A program made the translations under genes and the position numbers. A stretch of 62,902 nucleotides of DNA, filler included, from Olpidium bornovanus S191 (Eukaryota; Fungi; Olpidiomycota): the NCBI GenBank assembly GCA_017911155.1. It is 30 parts of 30 records of this genome, joined end to end, with 100 filler letters (N's around TTAATTAATTAA, not from the genome) between each part and the next. Parts side by side here need not be neighbours in the genome. Positions count along the whole stretch, not along the records: positions 5,369 to 7,718 come from JAEFCI010005932.1; 29 more parts are not named here. One strand, given 5' to 3'. Below, piece after piece: positions 5,369 through 7,670 of this stretch (the first letter of the stretch is position 1; the number at the start of each line of letters is the position of its first letter). Below the pieces are notes generated by a model that saw only the letters and a list, made by a program, of their open reading frames with translations, was not told the DNA's origin and did not search any database.

Positions 5369-6594
5369 AGCTTTCCGACGCATCCGTCCGCGAGGGTGCC
5401 CCTGTCGGAGCCTTCCGGGGCCTCGAACGCCAGGTCCACCAGCCGGTGCCAGTCGACCAGGAAGCGGCGGACGGCCGCGCGCGTCATGCCCAGAAACGTC
5501 ACCGGTAGCCCCGTGTAGCCGACCGCGCCGGGTTCGAAGACGATCTTGGAGCCGGGCTCCGCTCGGAGTATGGAAGCCGCCATCCTGATCACTTCCCCCG
5601 ACCGGAGAAGTCCGACTCCCTGCAGCGTTTCCCTAAAGCCCGGGTCCCCCCGCAACTGCCGCAAAACCCGCACCGAGGCGACTAGGGGCTGCGCGTCGTC
5701 CCCTCGCAGCTTGTATATCACGAGGGCCGGGTTGAAGCAGGCGACGACGCTCCCGTTGACGGCCATCTCGAAGCACGGACCGAGAAAATCCGTCAGGTAG
5801 TGCTCGTAGACCTGAAGGGCGGCGACGAACGAAGTGGCCGCCCGCGTCGGATGAGTGCTGCCCGTGACCGCGGAGATGTCCGGGGCCGAGGCCACGCGGT
5901 CGACCAGGCGGCTCAGACAGTTCGACTCCACGATGACGCCCGAGTCGACCACCGCCAGGTATCGGTGCAGGCGGAGGTTGATCCCCAGGACGTTCTCCGC
6001 GGCCCGTATGAGCTCGTGTTCGAGAGGCGAAAGGAGGACCCGTTCCGACGCGTCCGCGCCCGGGGCCAAGTTCTTCAGACGCCCGGCCTTTGAGGCGCCG
6101 CCCAGCCGCTCTAGAAAACGGAGCGTGAAGTAGAGGGTGTCCCGCTTTCCCCGGCAGCCCGGGCGCAGAAGGTTTCGGTTCGCCTCGTTACCCGTTTTGA
6201 CCATCAGTAAACACGGGACGCGGTGGGCGCCGCATTCGTAGAACCCGGCGTATACCTTTGCAAAATTGATCCTTTTCGCCCCGTCGCCCAGAGACGTGTA
6301 GGCTCGCGCAGGCGGATCCTGCCCGCCAAACGCCAGGAAGTCCAGGACGCCCCGCGCGGTGTCGACGGCGCCGCACGCGCGAGACGTCGCGGCAGCAGAC
6401 GCGGACGGGCTCGCCGTGCCGTCGCAGACTATGAAAAGCAGCCGCCTGCTGTCCTCGTAGTCTGATCGCGTGATGTTGTCGATGGTGGCGCGAATCATGT
6501 CCACCGGTTCGTTCAGACACCCGACCAGGGTGATGAAGTGCGCCTTCGGTGCAGCGACGACGGCAGACTCACCATCATCCAACGACGGCGAGGC

Positions 6595-6626
<32 letters not shown>

Positions 6627-7670
6627 TCTGCACGGCGCCGCTGGCCAAACGCGCGCCGGCGAGCAGCAAAAGACCGAGGGCGACGGGGAAAACCACCGGG
6701 TGCACAGGGTCGCAACCGTTGAAAGGTCCGCTCGCTCGCGGGGTGATGCCTTGGTAAAAGAGGTGGTCCAGGCACAAAACCGCCGCCCTGGCCTCGTCGG
6801 CATCCAGCGCGCCGTAGTCCCCGCTCGCGTCTTTTCCTGCGTTGTCGATGAGAAGCTGCGTCACGGTTCTGCCCAAAAAAGCCGTCCGGTCCGACGGTAC
6901 GGGGGCGCCCGTCGACGTGTCCGTCGCGAGACGCAGGTAATCCGTCACGTCGTAAACCTTGTCCATGATGATGACGAGCGACCGCTGACGCGGGTCGCTG
7001 CGCTCGAATCTGTGATGCTTGGCGACCTGCTCCGGCGTGTGCAGGAGCTCTGTAAGAACAGCGAGCAGGCGTCGAAGACTTATGAGCTTGCGTCCCGAAC
7101 ACAAACCTCGAATTCTCATTCACGCGGATTGCCGGGTACCTCCAATCGACCACTTGTTCACCGCCCGTCGCACATTCGGGGAGTAAAGGCAAGGCAGCGC
7201 CGGTTCCAACAAATCGCCCGGCGAAGGACAGTCGAGCCTCGAACTGCCGGCGCCGCGCTCGTCTCTGAGACGGTAGCCGATGTCTGCGAGCCGGGCGCTG
7301 AGCCACATGTCGGCAACGGCCGTTTGCCAGACGCAAAAATTCAAGGCCGTTTCCGCGTAAGTCGAGTTGCCTTTGCCGCGCGCCAGAGACATGAAAGCAG
7401 GGAAAATCGCCGAGACGTCGCCGCCAGCGAAACGAGCGAGGGACTCCGGGAGGAATTCCGCAGCAATTTCGTCATCCTCCGCAAAGTCGGCAAGGACCAC
7501 CTTGCCGTTGATTACGTAGTCCCCGTTGTCCCGCACGTGCTCAAGGCTGATTCCTCTCGGGACGTGGCACAGAGCGTCGGACAAAATGCGGAGAAGCGCG
7601 ACATAAAGCGCACAGAGGAAGTAGACGAAGGCGACCAGGAGAACCTTTTGCCGCCACGCGAGTTGAGCGG
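5369..7670 (-). CDS. Chitin synthase class V/VII-like protein with cytochrome-b5-like regions; catalytic motifs degenerate; partial at both ends
   Basis: QLAWRQKV, IMDKVYDVTDY, RRLLFIVCDG, AKVYAGFYE, RPGCRGKRDT and LQVYEH align with Chitin_synth_2-type enzymes. A 90-nt GT-AG intron (7050-7139) joins the two track ORFs. Confidence 0.88.

What the first reader, a model, noticed from the sequence alone, without database searches (positions are those of the whole stretch)
5369..7670. Intact chitin-synthase-like gene with every catalytic motif replaced: candidate pseudoenzyme
Seen: more than 1.6 kb of stop-free frame plus a clean intron, with the class V/VII scaffold kept (AWRQK, two b5-like regions, IVCDG, GKRDT, QVYEH). 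The GT2 motifs are changed: DAD reads DSG (about 5940), TCLPGCF reads ACFNPAL, the catalytic-base motif GEDR reads GEVI (5581-5598), and QRRRW reads AVRRF (5461-5478). Established: EDR and QRRRW are essential for chitin synthase activity. Inference: a non-catalytic subunit, scaffold, chitin or UDP-sugar sensor, or an enzyme with new chemistry, still under selection. This could be an undescribed wall-synthesis regulatory system.
Basis: partly seen in the sequence, partly recalled or inferred. Interest (0 to 1): 0.78.

Follow-up and report, generated by a model that had tools for sequence, protein, structure and literature searches.

The report
Expressed chitin-synthase-like gene, catalytic motifs lost
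This is a real, transcribed and correctly spliced gene for a chitin-synthase-like membrane protein that keeps the sugar-nucleotide-binding part of the enzyme but lacks the residues needed to make chitin; similar "dead" chitin-synthase relatives are already known in early-diverging fungi and fission yeast, so it is a new example, not a new kind of system.

Summary
On the minus strand the piece carries two exons of a division-2 chitin-synthase-like gene, cut at both ends (Pfam Chitin_synth_2, E 4e-47).

**Motifs against canonical enzymes**
- DAD reads DSG.
- CGET reads TGST.
- TCLPGCF reads ACFNPAL.
- GEDR reads GEVI.
- QRRRW reads AVRRF.
- "Every catalytic motif replaced" is overstated. CDG, GKRD, the E of PCYNE, the first D of DxD, Q and E of QxxEY, the E of ED and two arginines of QRRRW remain.

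**Support from other data**
- Contigs from two independent studies reproduce the sequence.
- One contig shows the 90-nt intron removed, so the gene is transcribed.
- The frame is open over 736 codons, where composition predicts about 15 stops.
- GC3 is 0.82.
- Both strain differences are synonymous.
- The protein keeps 69% of the family's most conserved columns.
- AlphaFold gives a confident synthase fold (pLDDT 83.6).

**Relatives**
No relative above 36% identity exists among 15 billion proteins, so dN/dS is not possible. The nearest relatives are motif-divergent CHS-like proteins of Mucoromycota, chytrids, a blastoclad and an aphelid.

**Verdict**
This is a maintained, non-chitin-synthesising CHS paralogue, a pseudoenzyme. 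Its role is unknown. It is a new member of a known kind.

The parts
7674..7718 (-). 3' end of an upstream intron. It is pyrimidine-rich and ends in the acceptor CAG at 7673-7671. The ATG at 7680-7678 lies inside it.
   Evidence: X1 contig record 6 fits 7382-7673 and then runs on with 16 letters unlike the window (table 7). Sequence read.
7140..7670 (-). Exon A: AWRQK (7645-7659), first transmembrane helix, and a degenerate first b5-like module.
   Evidence: Translation. phmmer of its 177 aa hits the N-terminal regions of the same relatives, collinear with exon B (P0009 E 1.7e-18). No Pfam hit.
7050..7139 (-). Intron of 90 nt, GTACCC...TTACAG, GC 0.53, with an in-frame stop.
   Evidence: It is removed in X1 contig record 5 (joint 7049|7140, ends CT..AC on the + strand).
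5369..7049 (-). Exon B, cut by the piece's edge. It holds the second b5-like module (about 6748-7038), a transmembrane helix (about 6619-6705), a Ser/Asp-rich linker (about 6565-6618) and the GT2 chitin-synthase-like domain.
   Evidence: Pfam Chitin_synth_2 4e-47 and Cyt-b5 2.8e-4, below cutoff. AF2 pLDDT 83.6. Foldseek best match PsChs1 7x06_A, E 3.5e-11. An X1 contig of 1294 nt covers 5369-6178 and runs 484 nt beyond the edge.
6508..6522 (-). Motif 1: GCLNE in place of PCY(N/T/S)E. E kept, Y changed to L.
6418..6435 (-). Motif 2: FIVCDG, kept (invariant D209 and G210).
6136..6150 (-). Motif 3: GKRDT, kept (invariant R299 G300 K301 R302 D303).
5938..5946 (-). Motif 4: DSG in place of DAD. The first D is kept and the second is changed to G.
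5800..5814 (-). Motif 5: QVYEH in place of QVYEY. Q and E kept.
5722..5742 (-). Motif 6: ACFNPAL in place of TCLPGCF. The LPG gate is lost.
   Evidence: G440 to P.
5587..5598 (-). Motif 7: GEVI in place of GEDR. The catalytic-base Asp is changed to Val.
   Evidence: D486 to V. The place is covered without differences by X1 record 1 and X4 record 8.
5461..5475 (-). Motif 8: AVRRF in place of QRRRW. Q changed to A, first R to V, W to F. The second and third R are kept.
   Evidence: The place is covered without differences by X1 record 1 and X4 record 8.
6462..6572 (-). Optional in-frame 111-nt internal intron ('exitron'), GTGAGT...CAG. Its removal deletes 37 residues that include motif 1.
   Evidence: X1 record 4 has 29 loose letters after 6462 that equal window 6574-6602 (table 7, read). 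The unspliced form is also present (X1 record 3, X4 record 10). Splice-site letters.

Best explanation
The piece is the middle of a gene for a division-2 chitin-synthase paralogue. The source is a GC-rich eukaryote, most likely an early-diverging fungus or close relative.

The protein keeps the membrane-anchored scaffold: the AWREK helix, two degenerate b5-like modules, a transmembrane helix and the GT-A core with interfacial helices. It also keeps most residues that hold the UDP-sugar donor: the E of motif 1, CDG, GKRD, the first Asp of DxD, and the diphosphate-binding arginine of QRRRW.

It has lost the general base (ED to EV), the acceptor-binding Trp and the Gln of QRRRW, and the LPG gate. 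It therefore cannot polymerise chitin by the canonical mechanism.

Shown: it is transcribed and spliced, its frame is open, and its fold-critical residues are kept. It is a maintained pseudoenzyme, not a decaying copy.

Inferred only: it acts through binding, either of UDP-GlcNAc/UDP or of an active CHS partner (solved CHSs are dimers), and not through catalysis.
For: Family and fold:
- Pfam Chitin_synth_2 E 4e-47.
- AF2 mean pLDDT 83.6, pTM 0.71.
- Foldseek top matches are chitin, hyaluronan and cellulose synthases, best E 3.5e-11.

Motif states, against 157 relatives:
- 118 relatives carry DAD/CGET/QVYEY/TCLPGCF/GEDR/QRRRW.
- The window carries DSG/TGST/QVYEH/ACFNPAL/GEVI/AVRRF.

Not an artefact: contigs of X1 and X4, from two studies, cover the motif places with no change.

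Transcription: an X1 contig lacks the 90-nt intron exactly.

Maintenance:
- No stop in 736 codons, where codon-position composition predicts 14.6 (P about 5e-7).
- GC by codon position is 0.66/0.50/0.82, against 0.53 in the intron.
- Both variants seen in the runs (5635, 6310) are synonymous third-position changes (read).
- 54 of 78 columns conserved at 85% or more are kept, against 65 of 158 and 50 of 232 in less conserved classes (Fisher p 1e-10).

Roles of the motifs: PMC12653383.
Against: - No orthologue was found. The best of 828 hits is 36% identical, so purifying selection was not measured by dN/dS.
- The end branch is very long, 1.8 changes per site.
- Two raw RNA-seq runs labelled with the same species gave no read. 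About 6% of each run was read, and presence of the organism in them is not shown.
- Part of the transcripts splice out 111 nt that encode the first strand and motif 1 of the GT core. This could be splicing noise of a gene under weak constraint.
- Two synonymous variants are weak statistics.
- Both ends of the gene, including the channel helices and motif 9, are outside the piece.
- Lack of activity is inferred from sequence, not measured.
Confidence: 0.62

Rival explanations
1. A redundant chitin-synthase paralogue under relaxed selection: a still-transcribed gene on its way to becoming a pseudogene, with no function of its own.
For: - Early-diverging fungi carry 15 to 38 CHS genes (PMC5122149), so redundancy is plausible.
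- Long orphan branch and no orthologue.
- Low-complexity Ser/Ala/Asp insertions with low pLDDT.
- An exitron removes core structure.
- No reads in two RNA-seq runs.
Against: - The open frame spans 736 codons against 14.6 expected stops.
- The splice sites are intact and used.
- GC3 of 0.82 has not relaxed toward the intron's 0.53.
- Retention rises with column conservation.
- The fold prediction is confident.
- The many replacements at several motifs imply a long time since catalysis was lost, and the frame stayed open throughout.
Confidence: 0.2
2. An active glycosyltransferase with changed chemistry. It could be a non-processive transferase, or a synthase of another product that uses the retained Glu of the ED motif or another residue as base.
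For: - The donor-binding motifs are kept.
- D-x-G at motif 4 is the state of active division-1 enzymes (DVGT, PMC12653383).
- W to F keeps an aromatic side chain.
- The nearest relatives form conserved clades with their own motif variants, such as GEE and QxRN in Mucoromycota. This suggests the family explores other activities.
Against: - Base, acceptor Trp, Gln of QxxRW and LPG gate are lost together.
- No group of relatives shares the window's variants.
- E290, N298, H476 and N479, conserved at 93-100% even among the non-canonical relatives, are also changed.
Confidence: 0.13
3. Assembly or sequencing error produced the aberrant motifs.
For: None found.
Against: X1 record 1 (5369-6178) and X4 records 7-10 (5369-6579) reproduce the region. 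The only differences are 5635 A>G and 6310 A>C, both synonymous.
Confidence: 0.01

Closest known systems
Non-canonical CHS-like proteins of Mucoromycota and Basidiobolus (P0003 Umbelopsis, P0004 Jimgerdemannia, P0005 Lichtheimia, P0007 Mucor, P0008 Blakeslea, P0009 Basidiobolus). They are probably the 'class VIII' of Melida et al. 2015, which Goncalves et al. dropped for lack of QXXRW (PMC5122149).
   Same: - Best sequence matches: E 1e-57 to 1e-44, 32-36% identity.
- Same N-terminal AWREK / b5-like / CS2 layout.
- No Trp of QxxRW and no TCLPGCF.
   Different: - They keep DAD and an acidic base (GEE or GED).
- They share their own conserved variants (QIFPxY, NGGF/L, QxRN), which the window does not have.
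- They form a supported clade that does not include the window.
- That this clade equals class VIII is my inference, not tested.
Rhizoclosmatium globosum ORY46363 (only QVYEY of the three CON1 motifs) and ORY39038 (no CON1 motif, fused to GH16), PMC13561034.
   Same: - Division-2-type CS2 domains of an early-diverging fungus with EDRxL and QxRRW undetectable.
- ORY46363 keeps only the QxxEY motif, the same state as the window (QVYEH).
[quoted passage not shown]
   Different: - These sequences were not compared here, because they cannot be fetched by accession.
- No chytrid protein scored above 33% identity. The chytrid group P0016/17/69/93 keeps GEDK/R and QRRSF.
Schizosaccharomyces pombe Chs2
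   Same: A chitin-synthase homologue without catalytic activity. It is kept and expressed, and it affects contractile-ring constriction and septation (PMC10184318, citing Martin-Garcia et al. 2003 and 2006). It is the precedent for a non-catalytic CHS with a structural or binding role.
   Different: By my own knowledge it is a division-1 protein of an ascomycete yeast without chitin in its vegetative wall, with no b5-like modules. It was not compared by sequence here.
Orphan degenerate CHS-like proteins P0035 (Paraphysoderma sedebokerense, Blastocladiomycota) and P0024 (Paraphelidium tribonemae, Aphelida)
   Same: - Long-branch CS2 proteins that each keep 52 of 78 conserved columns, against 54 for the window.
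- DxD is degenerate (NAD, NGG) and QRRRW is lost.
- P0035 shares TGS and NPxL with the window and aligns over 523 residues (27% identity, E 7e-49).
- The window and P0024 share 13 lost columns (p 0.01).
   Different: - Both keep the ED acid pair (GEDI, SEDE).
- No supported grouping with the window.
- Shared losses may be convergent.
Canonical division-2 chitin synthases (superclasses IV and V, for example P0001, P0002, P0019-P0023)
   Same: - Same Pfam family, fold and layout.
- QVYE(H) is closer to canonical QVYEY than to any non-canonical group.
- The AU test does not reject the window as sister to, or inside, the canonical clade (p 0.82).
   Different: All 118 canonical relatives examined carry DAD, GEDR, QRRRW and TCLPGCF. 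The window carries none of these intact.

Membership tests
Chitin synthase, Pfam Chitin_synth_2 (PF03142), GT2 | Profile match above Pfam's gathering score | tested here: met
   161.5 bits against a cutoff of 27, E 4e-47, profile positions 18-364 of 527.
Chitin synthase, Pfam Chitin_synth_2 (PF03142), GT2 | GT-A core with interfacial helices, as in solved processive synthases | tested here: met
   AF2 pLDDT 83.6. Foldseek matches PsChs1, CaChs2, ScChs1, HAS and CesA, E 3.5e-11 to 1e-5, probability 1.00.
Catalytically competent chitin synthase | D, D, D, QxxRW signature (CDG; DxD; ED; QRRRW), required by Goncalves et al. for inclusion (PMC5122149) | tested here: not met
   CDG is kept. DxD reads DSG, ED reads EV, QRRRW reads AVRRF.
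Catalytically competent chitin synthase | [quoted passage not shown] | tested here: not met
   Only QVYEH remains, with Q and E kept. The other two motifs are lost.
Catalytically competent chitin synthase | C-terminal channel helices and motif 9 (SWG/WGTR) | not testable with these tools
   They lie beyond 5369. The X1 transcript contig runs 484 nt further, but its letters are not available.
Catalytically competent chitin synthase | Chitin synthase activity | not testable with these tools
   Needs an enzyme assay.
Division 2, superclass V (classes V/VII): myosin motor domain and DEK_C | N-terminal myosin motor domain | not testable with these tools
   The transcript continues into an upstream exon outside the piece. 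The nearest relatives lack a motor domain.
Division 2, superclass V (classes V/VII): myosin motor domain and DEK_C | C-terminal DEK_C domain | not testable with these tools
   It would lie outside the piece. DEK_C is present in relatives P0003, P0004, P0009, P0024, P0033 and P0035.
Division 2 layout | AWREK helix followed by b5-like modules before the CS2 domain | tested here: met
   AWRQK lies at 7645-7659. Exon A is homologous and collinear with the relatives' N-termini. The Pfam Cyt-b5 match is below cutoff, 21.3 against 23.7 bits. No HPGG heme motif is seen.
Mucoromycota non-canonical clade (probable class VIII) | Shared variants QIFPxY, NGGF/L, GE(E/D) and QxRN, and membership of the supported clade | tested here: not met
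   The window has QVYEH, CFNPAL, GEVI and AVRRF. The clade has SH-aLRT 98-99 and excludes the window.
Pseudoenzyme (maintained non-catalytic homologue) | Catalytic residues missing | tested here: met
   D486 to V, W to F, Q to A, LPG lost.
Pseudoenzyme (maintained non-catalytic homologue) | Expressed | tested here: met
   Spliced contig in X1. The expression level and the protein are not shown.
Pseudoenzyme (maintained non-catalytic homologue) | Purifying selection shown on orthologues | tested here: inconclusive
   No orthologue among 1.84 billion representatives or the JGI metagenome contigs. Only indirect signs are available.

The most novel reading that the evidence does not exclude
The protein is a dedicated UDP-GlcNAc-binding, non-catalytic subunit that pairs with an active division-2 chitin synthase of the same organism, since CHSs work as dimers. 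It would tune that enzyme's activity or placement. The scattered motif-degenerate CHS-like proteins of Mucoromycota, chytrids, blastoclads and aphelids would then be repeated inventions of such regulators.
Probability: 0.12. Interest if true: 0.65.

Novelty: new member of a known kind. Interest (0 to 1): 0.36.

Why it matters
Surveys of chitin synthases have mostly set motif-less CS2 proteins aside as dubious (PMC5122149). This one is transcribed, spliced and structurally intact. It keeps the donor-binding half of the active site while losing the catalytic and acceptor half.

That pattern suggests at least some of these proteins are maintained for binding, not catalysis. If a role were shown, it would add a non-enzymatic layer to cell-wall synthesis in early-diverging fungi. 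It would also matter for counting 'chitin synthases' from genomes.

As it stands, this is one more example of a phenomenon already noted. Its function is unknown.

Tried and rejected
Searches that found little or nothing:
- The word search with exon B found only two distant canonical synthases, 25-28% identity.
- The word search with the last 269 residues found nothing.
- JGI metagenome contigs gave six loci at 25-28% identity and no close relative.
- The PDB sequence search gave nothing meaningful.
- Antisense and other-frame ORFs, including a 410-aa ORF on the + strand, have no Pfam family. They are by-products of high GC.
- No Rfam family matched.

Ideas tested:
- Assembly error: rejected by independent contigs.
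- Membership of the Mucoromycota clade: not supported.
- Orthology with Paraphysoderma P0035, suggested by shared TGS and NPxL: not supported by shared losses (p 0.6) or by the trees.
- An apparent shared insertion after GKRD: P0035's is much shorter.

Phylogeny:
- Placement stayed unresolved.
- The quick tree excluded the window from the canonical clade, but the constrained tree was better by 24 log-likelihood units (AU p 0.82). No origin is claimed.
- The careful tree did not finish in time.

Expression:
- RNA-seq raw reads X17 and X23 gave no read. This is no test, because the organism's presence in them is not shown.

Other limits:
- Contrast of donor-site against acceptor-site retention: 7 of 9 against 5 of 14, p 0.09, suggestive only.
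- The organism was not identified.
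Full report
**What is there**

The piece 5369-7718 is 64% G+C. It carries one gene on the minus strand.

In one frame, reading from 7680 down to 5371 is open except for a single stop. That stop lies inside a 90-nt stretch with GTACCC at its 5' end and TTACAG at its 3' end (7139..7050). A contig of run X1 joins 7049 directly to 7140. So this stretch is an intron, it is removed as predicted, and X1 holds RNA of this gene.

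The same run shows three more things:
- The transcript leaves the window at 7673 for an upstream exon. There are 16 loose letters, the acceptor is CAG at 7673-7671, and 7674-7718 is pyrimidine-rich intron. The ATG at 7680 is therefore probably not the start.
- A 1294-nt contig runs 484 nt beyond 5369.
- Part of the transcripts skip 111 nt in frame. The 29 loose letters after 6462 equal window 6574-6602, and the skipped stretch reads GTGAGT...CAG on the minus strand.

The gene is thus cut at both ends by the piece.

The joined protein was never sent to any tool.

**Family**

- Exon B (559 residues) matches Pfam Chitin_synth_2 at E 4e-47. It has a sub-threshold Cyt-b5 match.
- Exon A (177 residues) has no Pfam match. 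It is homologous to the N-terminal AWREK-helix and b5-like region of the same relatives, lying just upstream of their exon-B-like parts (best E 1.7e-18). This supports the gene model.
- AlphaFold2 with a 62-row alignment gives mean pLDDT 83.6 and pTM 0.71. Low confidence is confined to Ser/Ala-rich insertions and the cut end.
- Foldseek's best PDB matches are Phytophthora Chs1, hyaluronan synthases, Candida Chs2, yeast Chs1 and cellulose synthases (E 3.5e-11 and weaker).

**The motifs**

I compared the window with two canonical synthases and then with 157 relatives.

| Motif | Canonical | Window | Coordinates |
|---|---|---|---|
| 4 | DAD | DSG | 5938-5946 |
| (between 4 and 5) | CGET | TGST | not listed |
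| 6 | TCLPGCF | ACFNPAL | 5722-5742 |
| 7 | GEDR | GEVI | 5587-5598 |
| 8 | QRRRW | AVRRF | 5461-5475 |
| 1 | PCYxE | GCLNE | 6508-6522 |

Kept are FIVCDG, PGxRGKRD(T), the first Asp of DxD, Q and E of QVYE(H), the Glu of ED, and the second and third Arg of QRRRW.

The review PMC12653383 assigns roles to these motifs:
- Motifs 1-4 bind the nucleotide sugar.
- The Asp of ED is the general base.
- The third Arg of QRRRW binds the donor diphosphate.
- The Trp of QRRRW binds the acceptor.
- The LPG-type motif 6 gates the channel.
- Active division-1 enzymes have DVGT at motif 4.

So DSG alone is not proof of inactivity. The joint loss of base, Trp, Gln and gate rules out the canonical reaction. 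'Every catalytic motif replaced' is an overstatement. What is lost is the catalytic, acceptor and gate half. The donor half is mostly kept: 7 of 9 residues against 5 of 14, p 0.09, suggestive only.

**Not an artefact**

Contigs of X1 and of X4, which belong to different studies, cover the motif places. The only differences in the whole piece are 5635 A>G and 6310 A>C. Read against the frame, these are TTT to TTC (Phe) and CCT to CCG (Pro), both synonymous.

**Dead gene or maintained protein?**

Signs of maintenance:
- 736 codons carry no stop, where codon-position composition predicts 14.6 (P about 5e-7).
- The splice sites are intact and used.
- G+C by codon position is 0.66/0.50/0.82, against 0.53 in the intron.
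- Retention of the relatives' consensus residue rises with column conservation: 54 of 78 at 85% or more, 65 of 158 at 50-85%, and 50 of 232 below (p 1e-10).
- The fold prediction is confident.

The substitutions are spread over the whole protein, with an end branch of about 1.8 changes per site, and they hit several motifs. Loss of catalysis is therefore unlikely to be recent, yet the frame has stayed open.

Signs against maintenance:
- No orthologue exists to measure dN/dS.
- Two raw RNA-seq runs labelled with the same species gave no read. About 6% of each was read, and presence of the organism in them is not shown.
- The 111-nt optional splice removes the first strand and motif 1 of the GT core.
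- The evidence from variants rests on two sites.

I put 0.62 on a maintained non-catalytic paralogue, 0.20 on a decaying but still transcribed copy, and 0.13 on an enzyme with altered chemistry.

**Relatives**

phmmer against 1.84 billion representatives gave 828 hits, the best at 35-36% identity. Neither the organism's own proteome nor any close orthologue is in that collection.

Motif-divergent relatives:
- The top hits come from Umbelopsis, Jimgerdemannia, Lichtheimia, Mucor, Blakeslea, Backusella, Phycomyces and Basidiobolus. The Mucoromycota proteins form a supported clade that keeps DAD but carries its own conserved variants (QIFPxY, NGGF/L, GEE or GED, QxRN without Trp). Basidiobolus P0009 shares that motif pattern, but the trees place it outside the clade.
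- A chytrid clade (Spizellomyces, Phlyctochytrium, Fimicolochytrium, Quaeritorhiza) carries QxYPW, SWxGGF, GEDK and QRRSF.
- Single long-branch proteins come from Paraphysoderma (Blastocladiomycota), Paraphelidium (Aphelida) and Ramicandelaber.
- Several of these relatives carry Cyt-b5 and DEK_C. That is the superclass-V layout without a motor domain.

The window's place among them is unresolved. It falls in a basal polytomy. The AU test does not reject it as sister to, or inside, the canonical clade (p 0.82, with the constrained tree better by 24 log units). I claim no origin.

**What is already known**

- Goncalves et al. excluded proteins lacking D, D, D, QxxRW as 'dubious'. They name a Mucoromycotina 'class VIII' of Melida et al. 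2015 as lacking QXXRW (PMC5122149). The Mucoromycota clade found here probably is that class. This is my inference.
- S. pombe Chs2 is a CHS homologue without activity that affects ring constriction (PMC10184318).

A motif-degenerate, expressed CHS-like protein is therefore a known kind of thing. The window adds an orphan member that has also lost the acidic base.

**Mechanism**

Shown: fold, membrane anchor, retained donor-site residues, lost base, acceptor and gate residues, and transcription with splicing.

Inferred: the protein cannot polymerise chitin. If it functions, it does so by binding UDP-GlcNAc or UDP, or by pairing with an active synthase. No partner, ligand binding or phenotype was tested.

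**Verdict**

- Observation: confirmed.
- Interpretation: partly supported.
- Novelty: new member of a known kind.
- Interest: moderate to low.

Noticed in passing
window 6462-6572 (minus strand): An optional in-frame 111-nt internal intron (GTGAGT...CAG) lies inside conserved coding sequence. Spliced and unspliced forms both occur in X1, and only the unspliced form in X4. Removal deletes 37 residues that include motif 1 and the first strand of the GT core.
   Followed up: partly
window 7671-7718: The transcript contig of X1 diverges from the window above 7673. The apparent ATG at 7680 therefore sits in an intron, and the gene has at least one more 5' exon outside the piece. The loose letters read ...GGLWR before PAAQLAWRQK.
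   Followed up: partly
proteins P0003-P0015, P0018, P0025, P0030 (Mucoromycota), with Basidiobolus P0009 as a motif look-alike: A supported clade of CHS-like proteins has its own conserved active-site variants: DAD kept, QIFPxY, NGGF/L, GEE or GED, and QxRN without Trp. Some members carry Cyt-b5 and DEK_C. P0009 shares the pattern, but the trees place it outside the clade. Conservation of the variants suggests a function other than canonical chitin synthesis. The clade is probably the 'class VIII' dismissed in PMC5122149.
   Followed up: partly
proteins P0016, P0017, P0033, P0069, P0093 (Spizellomycetales, Quaeritorhiza): A second supported clade of chytrid CHS-like proteins has PVYNE, VDG, D(G/A)D, QxYPW, SWxGGF, GEDK/R and QRRSF.
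   Followed up: no
window 6565-6634: A GAC/GTC-rich low-complexity stretch encodes a Ser/Asp-rich linker after the transmembrane helix. Contigs break there, and the reads tool skipped 6580-6634 as a repeat.
   Followed up: no
runs X5, X8, X9: Soil metagenome runs of two studies hold 12-26% of the piece's sampled words. This hints that the source organism or a near-identical strain lives in soil.
   Followed up: no
window 6538-7716 (+ strand): A 410-aa open frame runs antisense to the gene. It has no Pfam family and is taken as a by-product of high G+C.
   Followed up: yes
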